A stretch of DNA of 64,000 nt from Lama glama (lineage: Eukaryota): contig CM052841.1 of NCBI GenBank assembly GCA_028534125.1, positions 68,262,001 through 68,326,000 of the forward strand. Direction: 5' to 3'. The notes beneath the pieces were generated by a model, which worked only from the letters and a program-made list of their open reading frames with translations, was not told the DNA's origin and ran no database searches. Positions 786 through 63,076 of the stretch are shown here, piece by piece. The position numbers and the translations under genes are program-made. Numbering within the stretch: the stretch's first letter is position 1; every line of letters starts with the position of its first letter.

Positions 786-10555
<9,770 letters not shown>

Positions 10556-11700
10556 GACGCCCTGCCCGCCCTCCTCTGCCCCCCTCCCCCGCAGACAGAC
10601 AGACAGACGGACGGGACAGCGGCCCGGCCCACGCAGAGTCCCGGAGCACGACGGGGTCAGGGGAGGAGCGCCCCCCCAGCCTCCCCCAGGCTGCGCCCGC
10701 CTGCCTGCTGGTCGGCCGGCTGGCCGGTCCACCCGTCCCGGCCCCGCGCGTGCCCCCGAGNNNNNNNNNNNNNNNNNNNNNNNNNNNNNNNNNNNNNNNN
10801 NNNNNNNNNNNNNNNNNNNNNNNNNNNNNNNNNNNNNNNNNNNNNNNNNNNNNNNNNNNNNNNNNNNNNNNNNNNNNNNNNNNNNNNNNNNNNNNNNNNN
10901 NNNNNNNNNNNNNNNNNNNNNNNNNNNNNNNNNNNNNNNNAAGGCCCGAGGGAAGCCCACCCGCCAGAGACTGCCCACCCTGGGCCTCCCGTCCCTACAT
11001 CTGCCCTGCTGCTGGCCGGCAGCCCCTACTGGACTGAGGCACGGACCAGAGCGGCTGAGGACGGGCCAGAGCTGAGCGGGCTGGGCAGGGCCACAGGGCG
11101 CTCCGGCAGAGGCAGGGCCCTGGGGTCTCTGAGCAGTGGGGAGAGGGGCTGACTTGGCCCCAGGCGGAGGGGCTTGGAGCAGAGACTGAAGCCCCATCCT
11201 TCCCCCAGCCACCACCAGAGCCACAGTGGGGGCCCTTGGCCACCCCCTCCCACAGCACCCGCACCTCACCGCCTCGCTCCACCTCTCCTCTTCTTGCTCA
11301 CGCCCCTCCTCCGCCTGACCCCATCCTCCGAGCTTGCCCTGCCTTTCCCCTTCTGCAGACCCTGACCCTCCCCCCCAGCTGGCAGCCGCCTCCCAGGGGG
11401 TGCTCCAGCTCCCCATTGCCTCCCACCTTCTCTGGACTCTGCAAGGGCTGAGCCTTCTCTTTGCTTCCTCTGGCCTGCAGCCCAGGATGGGCTTCCCCAG
11501 ACGCTGGCGCAGGACTGTCCTCAGCCCTGCGCCCCACCTTGTACAGGCCCAGCCCCTCCCGTGTCCCGGCGCGTGCCTTCCCCCAGCAGCCTGTGTGCAG
11601 CCGCGGGCCACCCCTCTGCCCCAGGGGCCGGGCGCGCACCGCCCACCCCCGCCCCGACCCGGTGTGTGCAGTGGTGATGCCTAAAGGAATGTCACGAAAA
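10556..11700 (+). other. GRIN1: GRIN1 3' UTR (alternative C2' coding segment probably hidden in gap 10761-10940)
   Basis: Follows the stop codon; contains (CAGA)n-CGGACGGGACAG and ends ...GTGGTGATGCCTAAAGGAATGTCACG, resembling the recalled end of mammalian GRIN1 mRNA. Confidence 0.75.
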
Positions 11701-43303: not shown

Positions 43304-51615
<8,312 letters not shown>

Positions 51616-52563
51616 GGGGTCGTCCTGCTGGCCGTGGCTACTCCCGCCAGTGGTCTCAGGGGGGCCCTGTCTGATCCCAGCCGGAGGACTGTCAGCTCTT
51701 CTGCACAGCTGACTCAGCTCCCACCCTCACCCTGACCCTGCTACCTGTCCACCACCCAGCCTACCCCTACACCATGGCTCCAAGTCTGCCCCTCCCCTCC
51801 TTCCAGGGTTCCTGGGTCCTGGTCAGGTTGGCTCCCTGGGCTGCACCACCCCACCCAGAGCTTAGGACCTGAGCGGCCGGAGGAGGCCCCCGGCAGCACA
51901 CCCTTCGTCGCCCTGTTCCAGGACAGACCCCACAATAAACGATGGCCTCTGGGTGGCTGCTTCCCACCTGCTCCTCCTGGTGTTGTCAGGGTCCTTAGGT
52001 GGGAGGTGGGCCCACAGCTCACTGCATGGGAATAGCCCACCCAGGGTGGGCACAAGTATACTGCCGCTCAGCCAGGCACTTTGGTGCTTGATTCTGATGC
52101 GCTGGGGTCCAGCTGTTTGCCCACCTTATACAGGCTCCGCTCTGGCCCCTGCAGCCAAGCAGTGGGAGGCCTGAGGCACCAGGCCAGGGTGCTCCAATCC
52201 ACTGGCCCCAAAACAGAGGCCCTGGGCCCTGGGCGGGGAGGGGCGTGGCCCAAGATGGGGTGCCAGTGGGAGTGGAGTCCCCGCCCCTGGGAGGGGAATT
52301 TTTGTTGGAGAAGTTGGGCGGGCCTACGCACCCTGCCTCCACCTAGAATCGGCTGGCTGGCTGGCAGTCAGTCACTCCCTGACACGCAGATCCCCAAACC
52401 TGGGGCGGGGCTGGGGCAGATCCTGTTGGGGACAGAACACAGGGCCTAGGAGCTGGCCCGGCAGCTGGGGACCAAGTGAAGTTCACGTTGAGTGAGGCTC
52501 GAAGCCAGGAGGAGGCGGCCATTGCTGTAAGGTCAGTGCCAGACCCTGCCCTAGAGGGCCACA

Positions 52564-53460
52564 CTGAACTTCACAGCCTTAACCACCCCCATCGCAGCCC
52601 TGGAGTCCCCGCCCACCCATCCTGACTCCTGCCCTGGGGCTGCCACCCCTGAACTGTGCCCTAGGGCCCCCACTCATGGCCCCACTGACCTCAGCTCTGG
52701 GCTCACCAGTCCGCCTTCGGCTTCTCTGGGCCCTGAGCACCTGGATTCACTGTGCCAGGTGCTGGCAGACGACGGGTTGGACAGCAGGGCCCCTGCGAAC
52801 CTCCAGGGTGCCAGGATTCTGGACAGTGAACCCCTGCTGGGGGCAGCAGTCATAGACTGCCCCTGGGCCCCCACAGAGGACGGGGACGAAGACGAGGAGG
52901 AGCAGGCTGGGGAGCAGGGGGAGGAGGAGGAGTGTCCCGTCTGCACAGAGCCCTACCGGTCCGGTGAGCACCAGCTGGCCCTGCTGAACTGCGGTCACAG
53001 CCTGTGTGCAGGCTGCCTGCACCGGCTGCTGGGCGCGGCCCCCAGTGCCGACCTGGGCCGGGTGCGCTGCCCGCTGTGTCGCCAGAAAACACCCATGCTT
53101 GAGTGGGAGATCTGCCGGCTGCAGGAGGAGCTGCTGCAGGCCGACGGGCCCCAGCGCCCCGCGCCCGCTGCTCCCCTCGGGCCCCTCCACGAGAGCCCCG
53201 GGCCCTGGGCCCGCCTAGAGCACCGCTACCAGCTGCACTTCCTGACGAGGCCCCTAGGCGGCCGAGGCTGCCTGCCCTTCCTGCCCTGCCCGCCCTGCCT
53301 GGGTGCCTGGCTCTGGGCCCTGCGGGAACGAGGGCCCTGCGCCCGCCGCATGGCGCTGCTGGGCCTGCTGGCCCTCGAGCTGCTGGGGCTACTGCTCATC
53401 TTCATGCCGCTCATACTGCTGGGGCTGCTCTTCGTGCTGCTGGACGGCTCCAGCCGCTGA
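52564..53460 (+). CDS. Unnamed RING-HC (C3HC4) protein with C-terminal transmembrane region, RNF183/RNF186/RNF223-like; start uncertain (candidate CTG at 52564 or 52600)
   Basis: Frame open from 52555 to TGA at 53460. Acidic tract, then CPVC-x15-CGHSLCAGC-x17-CPLC, then ~34-residue Leu-rich hydrophobic stretch. GC boxes at 52231-52290 and 52402; AATAAA at 54253-54258. No in-frame ATG before the RING. Confidence 0.85.
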   Translation: MNFTALTTPIAALESPPTHPDSCPGAATPELCPRAPTHGPTDLSSGLTSPPSASLGPEHLDSLCQVLADDGLDSRAPANLQGARILDSEPLLGAAVIDCPWAPTEDGDEDEEEQAGEQGEEEECPVCTEPYRSGEHQLALLNCGHSLCAGCLHRLLGAAPSADLGRVRCPLCRQKTPMLEWEICRLQEELLQADGPQRPAPAAPLGPLHESPGPWARLEHRYQLHFLTRPLGGRGCLPFLPCPPCLGAWLWALRERGPCARRMALLGLLALELLGLLLIFMPLILLGLLFVLLDGSSR

Positions 53461-55025
53461 GAAGAGCCCGCCGGGTCTGCCACCAGCACGGCCTGGGCTT
53501 GAGGTAGCCATGGCCACCAACGGATGGGAGGCCCAGACTGGCCCAGGCCCTGGAGCCGTGGGGCCTGATGGCCAGGCTGAAGAACCCAAGGTCGATCAGG
53601 GCACTAACTTTCAACCCAGACCCAAGCCTCGGACCCAGGGCCACCCAGAAGCCTCTGACCCAGCCGGAGACTCCACACTGCCCTGCTGCCCAGACGCTAG
53701 CCAGTGGTGCCTAAGGACAGCACCAGAGGAGGCCTGTGACCAGGGCCCGAAGTGCCCCTCGAGGGACAGGCCCCATGCTGACACTGGGCTGTCCCCGCTC
53801 TCCAGCCTGGCCTGTCTGCAAGAGGGGCACAGACACCGCGGACACAAAAATGAACAGAGGCCTGGGTCAAGTGCTCGGAGTGGGTGGGGCCCTCAGCAGG
53901 CACCTGCCCACGTTCCAGCTGAGAGTCAAGTGTGTGTTCCCTGAAGATCAGGGTAGCCGAGGGGAGGGCCCCTGCTGCACAGGCCCGGCCCACAAAGGGC
54001 CTCCTCTGCCGCCGGGCTGGGGTCCAAGTGGTGGCCCTGAGCAGCCCCAGGGGTGGAGGGGAGTGGCAGCACATGCCCCTCAGCCACAAGGGACCAGGGC
54101 GGGCCCTGGGGCCGAAGGCACCCTCACTCCCCTGCAGCCCCCCATGGCTGAGCCTGGGGCCTTTATTTGAGGGACAGACGCAGTCACAGCACCCCCCTCG
54201 TGGGCTCATTGGTGGCACGCCGAGCCCTGTGCCCGGCACAAGAAATGCTGTCAATAAACAGCTGCTCCTGACAGTGTCGTGACTGAGTCCTTATCGTCAT
54301 CACCCTGCCTCCACCAACTAGGTGACAGAGCCCCTTCTTCAAATCCAGGTCGTCTGAGTGCCAGACCCAGGGCCCTGAGGGCTTCACATCTGACGGTGAC
54401 TGCAGCCAGCCTGTGTCCCAGCCTCGGCTCAGACTGGCCCGTAGGCCCTTCTCACACCACCTCAGAGAGCCATGCGGGCACCAGGAGCCGGCTGGACGGA
54501 GCTGTCTGCCTATAGGCTGCACTCACGTTCAGCGGGCAGTGCAGAGGAGATGGCCTCCCTTTGCCTGGCTGGGCCTGCTTTGTGCACCTGCCCACACAGT
54601 CCTGCCTGGTGCATACAAGCAGCTGGCTCTGCGCAGATGCACAGGGCCTTCACGCACACACGCACACGGTCAGGCCCAGCCCTCCCAAGCAGCACGCCTG
54701 GCCCAGCCTGGCCCCCAGCGAGCAGAGCAGGCCTACCCCCAAGCAGCACCGGGCCTTCCTCTGGCTGCTCCAGCAGAGACCCTGTCTGGGCGGTAGCCCT
54801 GGGTACCCACCCTGGCCCAGGCCTGTGCACAGACCGAGGCTTCAGTCCAGGGAACAAGGTGCAAACTTTGGCAAAGAGTTTTAATGGCAAAGTTGGCTGC
54901 AGCGACAATGCCACGCGGGTGGGGGCCAGAAGCTGTGGTGGGCAAGGGGTCAGCGGGCAACAGGGCAGGGCCAGATCCCTGAAGAAGCAGCGAGCGAGGA
55001 CCGGTGGGCGGCGGGTGAGTGGGCA

Positions 55026-55823
55026 CTACATGATGGAACAGGCAGACAGCGGGTTCCGCACGTGGCAGGTGCACGCGGCCCCACAGTACTGCCGGAAGGT
55101 CTGGTAGCAACTGCCCTCAGGCTCGCCCCCCCACTGGCCACCGGATGGGGCGGTCAGCGCCTCAGGTGGCAGGCGGCTCAGGATGGACGTGTTGACAGCC
55201 AGCGCAGCCAGGCCGTAGTCAGTGAACAGCACAGTCTCACGGCGGCAGGTGGGACAGGAGATGAACTTGTATTTGGGGCAAGACTCGTAGAGAATCTGCA
55301 GGCACTGCTCACACACAGAGTGCAGGCAAGACAGCACGCGGGGCCGCCGCTGAGTGACGTTGTACGTGTGGCCGCAGGTGGGGCACTCGAGAGGCTCACC
55401 TGCGGCTGATGCCGCTGCTGCTGGGGCCCCTGAGGCAGCAGGGCCAGGCCGAATCACATACTGATTCACGATGACCTCGTCCGCGGGTGCCACTCGGGGG
55501 AAGCCCAGCTCCGCACTGCCCTTGCGGGACCGACGTGGCAGGGGTGGGGTACGGGGTGCCCCTTCCAAGGCAGGCATGTCCCCCCCACATGCCTGGTTGA
55601 CGATGATCTCTGTGTCTGAGGGCCAGGCTCGCTTGGGTGCCAGAGCCGGGGTGGGCCGGGGTGCAGGTGGGAAGCAGGGGGCGGCCGCCTGCAGCTCGGG
55701 GAACTTCTCAGGGTGGACGATCTTCATGGCCTCCATCTTGAGGATGACATGGGGGCCCTTCAGGCAGGACATGAGGAACCCTGGCCAGCCACTGCCCGCC
55801 TCTGGCCCAGGGTCAGCCGGCAT
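55026..55823 (-). CDS. RNF208: RING finger protein 208 (265 aa, single coding exon)
   Basis: MPADPGPEAGSGWPGFLMSCLKGPHVILKMEAMK..., RING CPTC...CLHSVCEQC...CPTC, ends CSIM*. ATTAAA (-) 54885-54880 and AATAAA (-) 54167-54162. Confidence 0.96.
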   Translation of the reverse strand: MPADPGPEAGSGWPGFLMSCLKGPHVILKMEAMKIVHPEKFPELQAAAPCFPPAPRPTPALAPKRAWPSDTEIIVNQACGGDMPALEGAPRTPPLPRRSRKGSAELGFPRVAPADEVIVNQYVIRPGPAASGAPAAAASAAGEPLECPTCGHTYNVTQRRPRVLSCLHSVCEQCLQILYESCPKYKFISCPTCRRETVLFTDYGLAALAVNTSILSRLPPEALTAPSGGQWGGEPEGSCYQTFRQYCGAACTCHVRNPLSACSIM

Positions 55824-56449
55824 CCGGCTGTCTCCAGTCAGACTGGGTGTTCGGGTGGATGGGAGAGTTGGGTGCGGCCGGGGGGGAGGGGAGGGGGCAG
55901 CATCCTGGTCCCGCCAGGCCTGGTGGGGACCCTGGCCGCCCTGTGGACTCCTGGGGGTGGCTGGCAAGAACTTGGGGGGAAGGGCCCCACCCAGTGGCCA
56001 CAGTGGCTTCTCTGGTCCAGTCCTAGAAGGAGGAGAAAGGGGCGGGGGAGGGGGAGAGGAGCAGGGGCAGGGGGGCGTGGGAGGCTGCCCTGGGCTGGCA
56101 GTCGGGCCCAGGGGCTCACCCAGGGTCTCCAGTTGCCGAGGCTGGCGAGGGGGCGTTGGGGGGGGTCCCCCTGCAGCCGAGATCAGCAGTCCCGGGGCCG
56201 GGACATCCGGGCAGGCAGGGGCTAGGTGGGCCCCATGGCTCCAGGACAGGGCGCCCAGGGAAGGCAGCTAGCCTGAGCCCTGGTTGCGGAGGAACCCAGG
56301 CCCCAAGCACGGCGGCGGTGGGAGCAGAGGAGAGGCCTGGACGAGGCCCGAGCTGCAGGTGAGAGACAGCGTGAGGGCAGCGCCCGGGCCCACCCTCATC
56401 CTGCACAAAAGACAGGGCGCCCGACCTCTGACCCTGACCCTCGCTGGAC

Positions 56450-57000
56450 TCGGAACCCAGCCCCCTCCCCAACCCCCGCCCCCCAAGCCCGACCTCTGCC
56501 CAGGAGTGGGGGCCGGCGAGTGGCGACCCCGCGCTGTCCCGCCCCGCCCGCACTCACCTGCCCCAGCCTGGCGTCCCCCGGCCGCGCGCCGCCGCCGCAG
56601 AGGTTGTCTCAAAGGCAGGCCCGAATGCGGCGCCCGCGCCTTGGCCCGGCGGCTCCGGAGGCTCCGGCGGCGACCTCGGGCGATGGCGTGGCCGCGGCGG
56701 CTCCCGGGGGCGCNNNNNNNNNNNNNNNNNNNNNNNNNNNNNNNNNNNNNNNNNNNNNNNNNNNNNNNNNNNNNNNNNNNNNNNNNNNNNNNNNNNNNNN
56801 NNNNNNNNNNNNNNNNNNNNNNNNNNNNNNNNNNNNNNNNNNNNNNNNNNNNNNNNNNNNNNNNNNNNNNNNNNNNNNNNNNNNNNNNNCCCCTCGATCC
56901 ACCGCGAGCCTGGCGCCGGCTCTCGGGGTCGCCCTCCCCTTCCCCACACCCCCGCTGGCAGCGTGCGAGTCAGGACCCCCGCGGCGTCCCCACCTCCAGT
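56450..57000 (-). promoter_or_regulatory. CpG island with probable non-coding first exon of RNF208
   Basis: CpG-dense; minus-strand donor CAG|GTGAGT at 56558/56557; partly masked by N-run 56714-56889. Confidence 0.6.
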
Positions 57001-58720: not shown

Positions 58721-59731
58721 AGAGGGAGCTTACCAGTGCCAGGCCCAAACTCACGTGATCGCATCCACTGTCACCCCCGTCTACAGCGACCCTGTATGGC
58801 GCAAGCTATGTGCCACCTTACAGATGAAGGTGGGAGGGGGTGCAAGGGCCAAGGACGGGGATGCTGAGGAGGGACTTGGGGCCCACGAGCCGACCGCGAA
58901 GGGAAACCGTAGTTTCTTGTATGAGCTAGAAGCGTCACTTGTGTATGAAGCCCATGTCGCCAATCTTAAGTACGTTTTATTGGCAAAAGTAAGTAAATCA
59001 AACATTTTTTTATCAGTTAAAAAACAGCAAAGCTCCGCGCAGTCTGTTCACAAACACCTTGATCTCTGCCTGCGAGGTCGAAGCTGTGAGTGACAGTGGG
59101 CACCTCTTCCTTCTGCTTCAAAGCAGGGGCTTTGAGGTGTGTGAGTGATGCCCGGGGACCCCAGACGACCTGCAGGCCTGGACTCTGTGGACCTGACCCC
59201 AGTGACCTGCAATCCAGCAGGGCCAGGACATGCCCCAGATGTGTTGAGTCTGAGTCACCCCGAATGGCAATGTCCCTCAGAGCCCAAGCCTTGGGCACCA
59301 CCCATCTGAAAAAGGAAGGGTGGGTGGGCACTGTGCTGGAAGAGCTGGGCCTCCTGGGATCTTGGGAACCCTGTCTGGGAGCCCCGCCCATGGCCCCGCC
59401 CCTCCCCAGTAGGGAAAAGGCAGCAGCCAGTCCCTCAGCTCACAGACACTGGGACCTGGCCCAGAGGACAAGAGGACTCCTTGCTACCATCACCACTTCA
59501 GGTGAGTCCTGAGCTGAGGGGCTCCCCCACCCACCCAGGACCAGCTTAGCTGCATCTTCCAGCCTCCCCCACCCCAACCCAGCTCCATCGCAAGGCACTG
59601 CCTCTCAGGGAAGGCAGAGGACCCCTGGGGCACAGCTGGGAGACACTTGCCTCCTTGCACATGCACTGACACACAGACCTTGAACACTCTTGGCATTTCC
59701 ACAGCCTCTGCCACCCCTGCCAGGCTGGGCC

Positions 59732-60121
59732 ATGGACCCCCACAACATGATGGTCAAGAACCCATATGCCCACATCAGCATCCCGCGGGCTCACCTGAGG
59801 CCTGACCTGGGGCAGCAGCTGGAGGCGGCTCCATTCTCCTCAGAGTCGCAGCCTGTGCCTCTGGGGCCCTGCACCCTGGAACCCGCCAAGGAGGCCCCAG
59901 GGTCCAAGGGGGCCAATTCCATCCAGGGCCAGCAGGCCTGGCAGCCACCCGGCAACCCCTGCAGCAGTGGGCAGCGCCCGGCAGGACTGACATATGCGGG
60001 CCTGCCGCCAGTTGGGCACGGCGACGACATCGCTCACCACTGCTGCTGCTGTCCCTGCTGCTCCTGCTGCCACTGCCCCCGCTTCTGCCGCTGCCACAGC
60101 TGCTGCTGCGTCATCTCCTAG
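59732..60121 (+). CDS. CYSRT1: Cysteine-rich tail protein 1 (129 aa)
   Basis: [31 protein letters not shown]...[28 protein letters not shown]. Acceptor ends at 59723, upstream donor CAG|GTGAGT at 59501/59502, AATAAA at 60399-60404. Confidence 0.95.

Positions 60122-62533: not shown

Positions 62534-63076
<543 letters not shown>

What the first reader, a model, noticed from the sequence alone, without database searches (positions are those of the whole stretch)
52555..53460. Unnamed RING-HC/transmembrane E3-ligase gene with no AUG start: candidate CUG initiation
Seen: the frame is open for 301 codons after TAG 52552-52554. It encodes a Pro/Ser-rich N-terminus, an acidic tract, an intact C3HC4 RING and a long hydrophobic C-terminus. 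The first in-frame ATG (53095) lies after the RING. In-frame CTGs occur in Kozak-like contexts at 52564 (GCCACA-CTG-A) and 52600 (GCAGCC-CTG-G). The nearest strong donor (AAG|GTCAGT, 52531/52532) supplies no in-frame ATG. The locus has its own GC boxes and AATAAA (54253). Established: this architecture matches the RNF152/182/183/186/223 endolysosomal/ER ligases. Inference: a real, poorly characterised gene starting at a near-cognate codon. I recall only an unnamed LOC-type annotation at the human position.
Basis: partly seen in the sequence, partly recalled or inferred. Interest (0 to 1): 0.8.

Follow-up and report, generated by a model that had tools for sequence, protein, structure and literature searches.

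The report
Membrane RING ligase gene lacking AUG start
This alpaca stretch is a real, conserved but unstudied membrane-anchored ubiquitin-ligase gene that has no usable ATG ahead of its catalytic domain. Comparison with about 100 other species suggests, but does not prove, that translation starts at the CTG at 52600.

Summary
After TAG 52552-54 the frame is open for 301 codons. It encodes a disordered Pro/Ser/acidic N-terminus, a complete C3HC4 RING and a C-terminal membrane helix. The first in-frame ATG (53095) lies after the RING.

The window is alpaca, and the gene sits between NDOR1 and RNF208. NCBI predicts it as 'ring finger protein-like' in over 100 mammals, birds and reptiles, so the gene itself is not new. 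NCBI's alpaca model is flagged 5'-partial because it found no ATG either.

What is new is comparative evidence on the start:
- Ortholog models share one reading frame only from the Leu encoded by CTG 52600 onwards.
- Just upstream, contiguous ORFs of different species read the same DNA in different frames.
- That Leu is present in 38 of 42 placental NCBI models. Its neighbours imply a purine at -3 and G at +4.
- 38 of 42 have no Met between it and the RING.
- Birds, reptiles and opossum start with ATG.
- The alpaca leader has no ATG for 420 nt.

Best reading: CUG initiation at 52600, giving a 286-aa tail-anchored E3 ligase (confidence about 0.55). An unseen ATG-bearing exon is therefore not excluded.

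The parts
52231..52408 (+). Putative promoter region with four GC boxes (52231, 52281, 52316, 52403). It lies about 300-470 nt downstream of the NDOR1 poly(A) signal (51934).
   Evidence: The transcription start was not determined (no reads).
52256..52675 (+). ATG-free stretch of 420 nt that covers the presumed 5' leader and the first 25 codons after CTG 52600.
   Evidence: Dinucleotide shuffles expect 3.5 ATGs; 0.75% of shuffles have none.
52383..52531 (+). First exon of NCBI's 5'-partial alpaca model (a different frame from the RING frame). It is preceded by TGA 52380-82, contains no ATG and ends at donor AAG|GTCAGT.
   Evidence: translation identical to residues 1-49 of P0001.
52532..52664 (+). 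133-nt intron of NCBI's alpaca model. It would remove CTG 52600 and 21 codons that other placentals keep in frame. It is probably a device of the gene predictor, and is unverified.
52552..52554 (+). In-frame TAG that closes the RING frame upstream.
52564..52566 (+). First in-frame CTG (gccacaCTGa), the less likely start. The segment around it ('RATLTFTAP') is read in another frame ('EGH.DL') in 14 ortholog models.
52600..52602 (+). Proposed initiation codon CTG in the context gcaGccCTGg (G at -3, G at +4). It corresponds to a Leu kept in 38 of 42 placental NCBI models and marks where frame conservation begins.
52600..53460 (+). Proposed coding sequence: 286 codons plus TGA.
52600..52929 (+). 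Disordered Pro/Ser-rich N-terminal region ending in an acidic tract. It is 38-67% identical to other placental orders, with the frame kept in 59 models.
   Evidence: pLDDT below 50 for most of residues 1-96.
52676..52855 (+). The only ATG before the RING (ccactcATGg). It is out of frame and opens a 59-codon overlapping ORF. It is not conserved: it exists only where the main frame reads His-Gly.
52933..53079 (+). C3HC4 RING finger, from C127 to C175 in ORF numbering.
53095..53097 (+). First in-frame ATG (KTPMLEWEIC), after the RING. This Met is conserved as an internal residue in the mammal, bird and reptile orthologs examined.
53335..53454 (+). C-terminal hydrophobic helix (tail anchor), followed by only a few residues.
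   Evidence: helix 246-285, pLDDT about 90.
53461..54275 (+). 3' untranslated region with AATAAA at 54253-58. Its end probably overlaps the 3' end of RNF208 on the opposite strand.

Best explanation
The locus is the alpaca ortholog of a vertebrate gene that NCBI calls 'ring finger protein-like'. It encodes a tail-anchored RING-HC ubiquitin ligase.

Protein (inferred from the domains, not tested):
- The RING and the roughly 110-residue disordered region before it face the cytosol.
- A single helix at the extreme C-terminus holds the protein in an internal membrane.
- The RING recruits a ubiquitin-loaded E2 to ubiquitinate membrane-proximal substrates.

Start codon (inferred):
- In alpaca, and probably in most placentals, the mRNA has no AUG that could give a RING-containing protein.
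- Scanning ribosomes cross an AUG-free leader and start at the CUG at 52600, which sits in a strong Kozak context.
- CUG is decoded by initiator Met-tRNA, giving a 286-aa protein.
- Ribosomes that miss the CUG would meet the out-of-frame AUG at 52676, or the AUG at 53095, which would give a 121-aa product without a RING.

Shown here: the gene, its domains, its conservation, the absence of an AUG in the genomic stretch, and the position where the conserved reading frame begins.

Inferred only: the transcript structure, use of the CUG, membrane topology and ligase activity.
For: 1. Real gene: 107 orthologs at E 1e-175 to 1e-32, from placentals to lizards, and about 35 bird models of uniform length. 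The RING ligands are invariant.

2. No AUG: there is none in any frame from 52256 to 52675, then one out-of-frame ATG, then 53095 after the RING. NCBI's own alpaca model is 5'-partial for lack of a start.

3. The coding frame begins at the 52600 codon.
- 59 models share one frame from that Leu to the RING.
- The 15 codons upstream are read as 'RATLTFTAP' in 25 models and as 'EGH.DL', the same DNA in another frame, in 14 models.
- Both classes include contiguous ORFs called on Logan contigs, so splicing does not explain the difference.
- Other species' models match the alpaca upstream DNA in all three frames.

4. The Leu is kept in 38 of 42 placental NCBI models.
- The residue before it is T (27), A (8) or V (1), which implies a purine at -3.
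- The residue after it is G (29), E (5) or A (3), which implies G at +4.
- The alpaca DNA reads gcaGccCTGg.

5. 38 of 42 models have no Met between that Leu and the RING. The Mets that do occur, for example in primates just before the RING, are lineage-specific.

6. Predicted N-termini differ even between close relatives such as Meles and Mustela. This is expected if the predictor is forced to find some ATG.

7. Sauropsids and opossum start with ATG. MAFFT places the opossum Met3 ('MAMGSQEP') in the Leu column ('ATLGSQP').

8. ATG depletion: 0 observed against 3.5 expected over 420 nt (p about 0.0075), and 1 against 6.2 over 839 nt (p about 0.0005).

9. Protein architecture: RING modelled confidently, C-terminal helix 246-285 at pLDDT about 90, N-terminus disordered; hydropathy.
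Against:
- No mammalian ortholog DNA could be fetched (closed; one search gave only a bird). Whether the conserved Leu is CTG in other species, and the -3 and +4 bases there, are inferred from amino acids only.
- The comparison rests on gene models and ORF calls. Species whose N-terminal frame is broken would simply show shorter models, so there is ascertainment bias.
- BLAST finds no significant similarity between the first 40 opossum residues and placental N-termini. The Met-to-Leu correspondence is therefore only suggestive.
- NCBI's alpaca model splices out the CTG (intron 52532-52664). If RNA supports that intron, this start is wrong.
- No significant RNA structure lies downstream of the CTG (z = -0.9).
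- Some species (rabbit, shrew, galago) have their own in-frame ATG a few codons upstream.
Confidence: 0.55

Rival explanations
1. An ordinary AUG start is supplied by an upstream exon that the genomic reading misses. The true mRNA would be spliced so that an ATG-bearing exon joins the RING frame downstream of TAG 52552. One arrangement that is in frame on paper runs from ATG 52255 (cccaagATGg) to a donor GCA|GTCAGT at 52367/52368, joined to the acceptor at 52664/52665. A read-through from NDOR1 is another possibility.
For: - A good-context ATG at 52255 and a phase-compatible donor/acceptor pair exist.
- NCBI's model already uses the 52664/52665 acceptor.
- Many ortholog models have long N-terminal extensions built from upstream DNA.
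- Transcript structure is unknown.
Against: - Any such splice removes the codons from 52600 to 52662, which 59 models keep in frame.
- The peptide after ATG 52255 is matched only partially, by one whale model, and the upstream DNA is used in all three frames by different species' models.
- Upstream extensions differ even within one family.
- The acceptor-like AG at 52596-97 cannot be conserved in the many species whose residues there are Ala-Thr, Thr-Thr or Val-Thr.
- The donor has C at +3 and A at -1, a weak match to the consensus.
- NCBI's pipeline still found no ATG and marked the alpaca model 5'-partial.
Confidence: 0.15
2. Translation starts at a non-AUG codon other than 52600. Candidates are CTG 52564, ATC 52591, or several weak sites used together.
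For: - CTG 52564 has A at -3 (gccacaCTGa) and follows the stop directly.
- 'RATLTFTAP' around it is well kept in whales, carnivores, many rodents and some bats.
Against: - In 14 models (horse, bovids, deer, several bats, Acomys, Erethizon, heteromyids) that segment is in a different frame from the RING, so a start there cannot be a shared solution.
- +4 is A, not G.
- The codon at the ATC 52591 position varies between species (V, S, T, I, A).
Confidence: 0.1
3. The alpaca copy no longer makes the RING protein. The start was lost in camelids. The mRNA would then yield nothing, the 59-codon out-of-frame peptide from 52676, or only the 121-aa membrane protein without a RING from AUG 53095. On this reading the intact frame reflects a recent loss.
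For: - There is no ATG ahead of the RING, a TAG lies 16 codons upstream of the conserved Leu, and NCBI's model is partial.
- No other camelid model was found for comparison.
Against: - The ORF has no stop or frameshift over 286 codons.
- It is 75-86% identical to other placental orders in the RING, middle and membrane parts.
- The lack of a conserved ATG is shared by most placental orders, not special to alpaca.
Confidence: 0.12
4. It is a chance open frame in GC-rich DNA, not a gene.
For: - The region is 67% G+C, where stop codons are rare.
- A 125-codon open stretch has a chance of roughly 5% (my estimate from base composition).
Against: - 107 orthologs with invariant RING ligands.
- Pfam hits above gathering scores.
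- 4-8 stops in each of the five other frames.
Confidence: 0.01

Closest known systems
NCBI 'ring finger protein-like' / 'uncharacterized protein LOC...' gene models (P0001 from Vicugna pacos, and orthologs in over 100 vertebrates)
   Same: It is the same gene. P0001 is 100% identical over 88% of the ORF. The neighbours are NDOR1 upstream and RNF208 downstream.
   Different: The models give every species a different N-terminus, and the alpaca one is 5'-partial with an intron that removes the proposed start. None was seen to carry a non-AUG start. No functional paper on the gene was found. A human entry, LOC122513141 (UniProt A0A2R8Y4M4), is listed as a RING E3 in PMC13061254 and called an unknown ER-membrane protein in bioRxiv 10.1101/2024.10.01.615885. 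It may be the human ortholog, but I could not verify this.
RNF183 family (RNF183, RNF186, RNF182, RNF152): tissue-specific membrane RING ligases of the ER and lysosome (review PMC7313026)
   Same: C3HC4 RING followed by a C-terminal transmembrane helix. The nearest language-model clusters are named RNF183, RNF183-like, rnf152-like and RNF182 (scores 0.88-0.95).
   Different: No member reached E<=1e-3 in the word-based search. Pfam RNF152_C is absent. The RING is preceded by about 110 disordered residues instead of lying at the N-terminus. Localisation and substrates are unknown.
RNF208 and RNF224, the neighbouring small RING genes in the same window
   Same: Compact RING-HC genes in one cluster. 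The RINGs are 32-33% identical to this one (E 1e-8 and 3e-9 for the pairwise comparisons).
   Different: Both begin with ordinary ATGs and lack the long C-terminal hydrophobic helix. Similarity is confined to the RING.
Mammalian genes translated only from non-AUG codons, as listed in PMC9789052 (EIF4G2, TEAD1 at AUU, STIM2 at UUG, TRPV6 at ACG), and POLGARF (CUG, PMC7059407)
   Same: No usable AUG for the conserved protein, conservation of coding sequence upstream of the first AUG, and a near-cognate codon in a good Kozak context.
   Different: Those cases have ribosome-profiling, reporter or protein evidence; this one has none. Here sauropsid and opossum orthologs use AUG, and some placental lineages (primates, rabbit) have their own AUGs.

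Membership tests
RING-HC (C3HC4) E3 ubiquitin ligases | Eight zinc ligands in the order C-C-C-H-C-C-C-C with RING spacing | tested here: met
   C127, C130, C146, H148, C151, C154, C172 and C175 are all invariant in alignment A1. Five Pfam RING models score above their gathering thresholds.
RING-HC (C3HC4) E3 ubiquitin ligases | RING fold | tested here: met
   The AlphaFold2 model has pLDDT of about 80-90 over residues 110-165. Sequence matches to solved TRIM32, TRIM23 and NOT4 RINGs reach E 1e-8 to 1e-3.
RING-HC (C3HC4) E3 ubiquitin ligases | E2-dependent ubiquitin transfer | not testable with these tools
   Needs an autoubiquitination or E2~Ub discharge assay.
'Ring finger protein-like' ortholog group (NCBI name) | Full-length sequence orthology | tested here: met
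   P0001 is 100% identical, and 106 further proteins score E 1e-132 to 1e-32 with matching RING, middle motif and C-terminal helix.
'Ring finger protein-like' ortholog group (NCBI name) | Position between NDOR1 and RNF208 | tested here: inconclusive
   Seen in the alpaca window.
RNF183 family (RNF183/186/182/152) | High sequence homology among members | tested here: not met
   No RNF183, RNF186, RNF182 or RNF152 protein appeared at E<=1e-3 among the 8000 candidates scored. Pfam RNF152_C did not match at E<=1. Only language-model feature similarity was found.
RNF183 family (RNF183/186/182/152) | RING at the N-terminus | tested here: not met
   The RING starts at about residue 112 of the 286-aa product.
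RNF183 family (RNF183/186/182/152) | One or two C-terminal transmembrane domains | tested here: met
   A single hydrophobic helix spans residues 246-285 of 286.
RNF183 family (RNF183/186/182/152) | ER or lysosomal localisation and tissue-specific expression | not testable with these tools
   No expression or localisation data were obtained.
Tail-anchored membrane proteins | A single membrane helix at the extreme C-terminus and no N-terminal signal peptide | tested here: met
   The hydropathy maximum covers residues 250-286, and only about 5 residues follow the helix. The N-terminus is polar and disordered. Insertion pathway and topology are inferred.
Genes with exclusive non-AUG initiation | No in-frame AUG upstream of an essential conserved domain in the mRNA | tested here: inconclusive
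   True for the contiguous genomic sequence 52256-53094 and for NCBI's spliced model. The real transcript was not seen.
Genes with exclusive non-AUG initiation | Coding conservation upstream of the first AUG | tested here: met
   59 models keep one frame from the 52600 codon to the RING, and 38 of 42 placental NCBI models have no Met there. This is protein-model level only; no dN/dS or PhyloCSF score was computed.
Genes with exclusive non-AUG initiation | A conserved near-cognate codon in a favourable context | tested here: inconclusive
   Alpaca has gcaGccCTGg. In other species only the residues are known (Leu in 38 of 42, neighbours implying R at -3 and G at +4). Their codons are unknown.
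Genes with exclusive non-AUG initiation | Ribosome initiation or an N-terminal peptide at that codon | not testable with these tools
   Needs initiation-site Ribo-seq, reporters or N-terminomics.

The most novel reading that the evidence does not exclude
A vertebrate membrane E3-ligase gene lost its AUG in the stem placental lineage, plausibly by a single ATG-to-CTG change at the ancestral start position. It has since been translated from that CUG, in a preserved Kozak context, for about 100 million years. A few lineages (primates, rabbit) later acquired their own AUGs. This would make it one of the very few mammalian genes whose only functional product depends on a non-AUG start. It would also mean that the current predicted N-termini are wrong in most species: too long where an upstream ATG was borrowed, too short in primates.
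Probability: 0.35. Interest if true: 0.7.

Novelty: new member of a known kind. Interest (0 to 1): 0.55.

Why it matters
- Mammalian genes translated only from a non-AUG codon are few: PMC9789052 names four such genes, among just over 60 reported non-AUG-initiated proteoforms. Each is a test bed for how start-codon stringency (eIF1, eIF5, eIF2A) controls protein output.
- A conserved E3 ligase whose whole output depends on a CUG would probably be made at low levels that respond to stress. That is a plausible regulatory design for a ligase, but it is untested.
- Automatic annotation gives this gene a different, probably spurious, N-terminus in almost every species, and a truncated or partial one in alpaca and primates. 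A defined start would correct more than 100 database entries and give the right construct for functional work on an unstudied ligase.
- If the CUG reading is wrong, what remains is an ordinary, already predicted RING gene with an unresolved first exon.

Tried and rejected
- **Reads:** The look-up of sequencing runs listed four RNA-seq runs from reproductive tissue and ten probable RNA runs holding 0.37-0.39 of the sampled words, and DNA-like runs holding 0.95. Those places were not sent to any search tool afterwards.
- **Metagenome scan:** No codon-level comparison, dN/dS or CTG-conservation check among mammals was possible.
- **Acceptor at 52596-97 (cgcAG|CC):** considered as the reason the frame starts there. 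Rejected as a shared explanation, because the residues at that place in most species (Ala-Thr, Thr-Thr, Val-Thr) cannot encode an AG at that position.
- **TAG 52552-54 as an acceptor:** rejected. It lies only 23 nt from the donor, and the segment after it is out of frame in many species.
- **RNA structure after the CTG:** not significant (z = -0.9).
- **Opossum comparison:** MAFFT aligns opossum Met3 with the placental Leu, but BLAST gives no significant N-terminal alignment. I kept this as a hint only.
- **RNF228:** a newly named human single-exon RING gene, checked as a possible identity. Rejected because it lies at 2q36 near PAX3.
- **Large HMMER search of representatives:** not run. Orthologs were already plentiful and the claim does not rest on the absence of relatives.
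- **Spliced NCBI model:** checked exon by exon.
Full report
**What is there**

The window is alpaca: the best protein hit, P0001 ('ring finger protein-like, partial [Vicugna pacos]'), is 100% identical to the ORF. On the + strand, TAG 52552-54 is followed by 301 sense codons and TGA 53458-60.

The product has four parts:
- a Pro/Ser/Leu/Glu-rich N-terminal part ending in an acidic tract;
- a C3HC4 RING, matched by five Pfam RING models above gathering score at residues 126-178, with all eight zinc ligands invariant from mammals to birds;
- a conserved middle segment (GPWA.LEHRYQLRF...GCLPFLPCPPCL);
- a very hydrophobic C-terminal helix (Kyte-Doolittle up to 2.96).

An AlphaFold2 model built on 43 orthologs shows residues 1-96 as disordered, the RING at pLDDT about 80-90, and a long terminal helix (246-285) at about 90. 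The five other frames over the same span have 4-8 stops each.

**Surroundings**

- NDOR1 ends upstream on the same strand: last exon '...RFQMETWA', stop at 51613, AATAAA at 51934.
- RNF208 lies downstream on the opposite strand (55026-55823). CYSRT1 (59690-60121) and RNF224 (62609-63076) follow.
- The RINGs of RNF208 and RNF224 are 32-33% identical to this one, and nothing else aligns.

**The start problem**

- In alpaca there is no ATG in any frame between 52255 and 52676. The ATG at 52676 is out of frame and opens a 59-codon overlapping ORF. The next ATG, at 53095, is in frame but lies after the RING.
- The ATG at 52255 is in the RING frame but runs into TAG 52447.
- NCBI's own model (P0001) joins 52383-52531 to 52665-53457, which I checked exon by exon without joining the pieces. 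Its first exon is preceded directly by TGA and holds no ATG, which is why the model is labelled partial.
- The ATG-free run of 420 nt is unusual for this composition: 3.5 are expected and 0.75% of dinucleotide shuffles have none. Over 52256-53094 there is one ATG against 6.2 expected, which 0.05% of shuffles reach.

**Comparative evidence**

I aligned the ORF with 105 ortholog models and ORF calls and classified their upstream parts.

- *Frame.* From the Leu encoded by CTG 52600 to the RING, 59 models share one frame and are alignable throughout. In-frame length differences include a 9-residue block 'CPGxxxPEL', which is present in alpaca, whales, bovids, horse and primates and absent in carnivores, bats and rodents.
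- *Upstream segment.* The 15 codons just upstream appear as 'RATLTFTAP...' in 25 models and as 'EGH.DL...' in 14. These are the same DNA read in two frames, as the alpaca sequence itself shows. Both classes contain ORFs called on contiguous Logan contigs, so splicing is not the cause.
- *Further upstream.* 'RSVPDPA' (most orders) and 'GQCQ' (whale, Myotis) are again alternative frames of one segment. BLAST of the alpaca upstream DNA translated in three frames finds matches to other species' models in all three.
- *Conclusion on frame.* Frameshifting length changes are tolerated up to a few codons before the 52600 codon and not after it.
- *The Leu and its context.* The residue at that codon is Leu in 38 of 42 placental NCBI models. 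The residue before it is Thr (27), Ala (8) or Val (1), so the base at -3 is a purine. The residue after it is Gly (29), Glu (5) or Ala (3), so the base at +4 is G. Alpaca reads gcaGccCTGg.
- *No shared Met.* 38 of the 42 models have no Met between this Leu and the RING. The Mets that exist are lineage-specific, for example just before the RING in primates.
- *Unstable predicted N-termini.* They differ even between badger and ferret.
- *Outgroups.* About 35 bird models start with a conserved 'MEPAAGEEAEPGPQP', and a bird metagenome locus shows the ATG in the DNA. Lizards and turtles also start with Met, and opossum starts 'MAMGSQEPEP'. MAFFT places the opossum Met3 in the Leu column ('ATLGSQP'). 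BLAST gives no significant alignment of the first 40 opossum residues, so this is only a hint that the CTG sits where the ancestral ATG was.

**Reading**

The simplest account is that placentals have no shared AUG for this protein and start at the CUG homologous to 52600. This gives a 286-aa tail-anchored ligase in alpaca.

I weighed four alternatives:
- an unseen ATG exon (one in-frame combination exists on paper: ATG 52255 to a donor at 52367/68, joined to the acceptor at 52664/65);
- another near-cognate codon;
- loss of the RING product in camelids;
- a chance ORF.

The first would delete codons that all orders conserve, and it relies on a weak donor. The third fits poorly with an undisturbed frame that is 75-86% identical to other orders in the RING, middle and membrane parts. 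The last is excluded.

**What is missing**

Those places were not sent to any search tool again.
The codon identity of the conserved Leu in other species, dN/dS and PhyloCSF-type tests are therefore undone.
- An RNA fold around the CTG was not significant.

**Comparison with known things**

- The gene is already predicted by NCBI in more than 100 vertebrates, but I found no paper on it.
- A human entry, LOC122513141 (A0A2R8Y4M4), is listed as a RING E3 (PMC13061254) and described as an unknown ER-membrane protein (bioRxiv 10.1101/2024.10.01.615885). It may be the ortholog; this is unverified.
- RNF228 is a different gene at 2q36.
- The protein works like the RNF183 family (RING plus C-terminal membrane helix; PMC7313026), and language-model features place it nearest to clusters with those names. 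It fails the sequence-homology and N-terminal-RING criteria, so I do not file it as a member.
- As a non-AUG gene it would join EIF4G2, TEAD1, STIM2, TRPV6 and POLGARF (PMC9789052; PMC7059407).

**Handling notes**

- P0067 (labelled Homo sapiens) was printed once. P0067 and P0069 were left out of all alignments.
- P0017 and P0018 look human or ape. They were in the alignment and were left out afterwards.
- No human contig was fetched, saved or compared.
- N runs in the window were left as they are.

**Verdict**

The gene is real but already predicted. Non-AUG initiation is the best-supported reading, with CTG 52600 as the specific candidate, at moderate confidence (0.55). Transcript and ribosome data are still needed.

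Noticed in passing
window 54145-54275: This gene's AATAAA (54253, + strand) and a minus-strand AATAAA (TTTATT at 54162) downstream of RNF208 suggest that the two convergent genes have overlapping 3' ends.
   Followed up: no
window 55026-55967 (-), 59690-60121 (+), 62609-63076 (+): RNF208, CYSRT1 and RNF224 follow in the order known from the human 9q34.3 region (order recalled from memory). The RNF208 and RNF224 RINGs are 32-33% identical to the RING studied here, with similarity confined to the RING.
   Followed up: partly
window 51391-51615 and 51934: The last NDOR1 exon ends '...RFQMETWA' with its stop at 51613 and AATAAA at 51934. Whale models of the RING gene start at an ATG that in alpaca lies at 51942, directly after the NDOR1 poly(A) signal. 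That is probably a predictor artefact or a read-through transcript.
   Followed up: partly
window 52676-52855: An out-of-frame ATG (ccactcATGg) opens a 59-codon ORF overlapping the N-terminal coding region. It exists only in species where the main frame reads His-Gly (alpaca, whales, carnivores, some bats). It could divert ribosomes that skip the CTG.
   Followed up: partly
window 52627-52653: A 27-nt in-frame block ('PGAATPELC' in alpaca) is present in alpaca, whales, bovids, horse, primates, colugo, rabbit and anteater, and absent in carnivores, bats, rhinoceros and rodents. It looks like a short duplication of the 'CP.xxxP' motif and shows recurrent 3n length change in the N-terminal region.
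   Followed up: no
window 2501-2696, 8207-8419, 10318-10537, 10761-10940, 56714-56889: Five runs of N (176-220 bases each, 985 in all).
   Followed up: no
   Followed up: no
L001:2600-3250: A JGI metagenome contig (Ga0065711_1006090) carries a bird ortholog with an ordinary ATG start ('MEPAVGEEAEPGPQP'). This is host DNA in a metagenome.
   Followed up: partly
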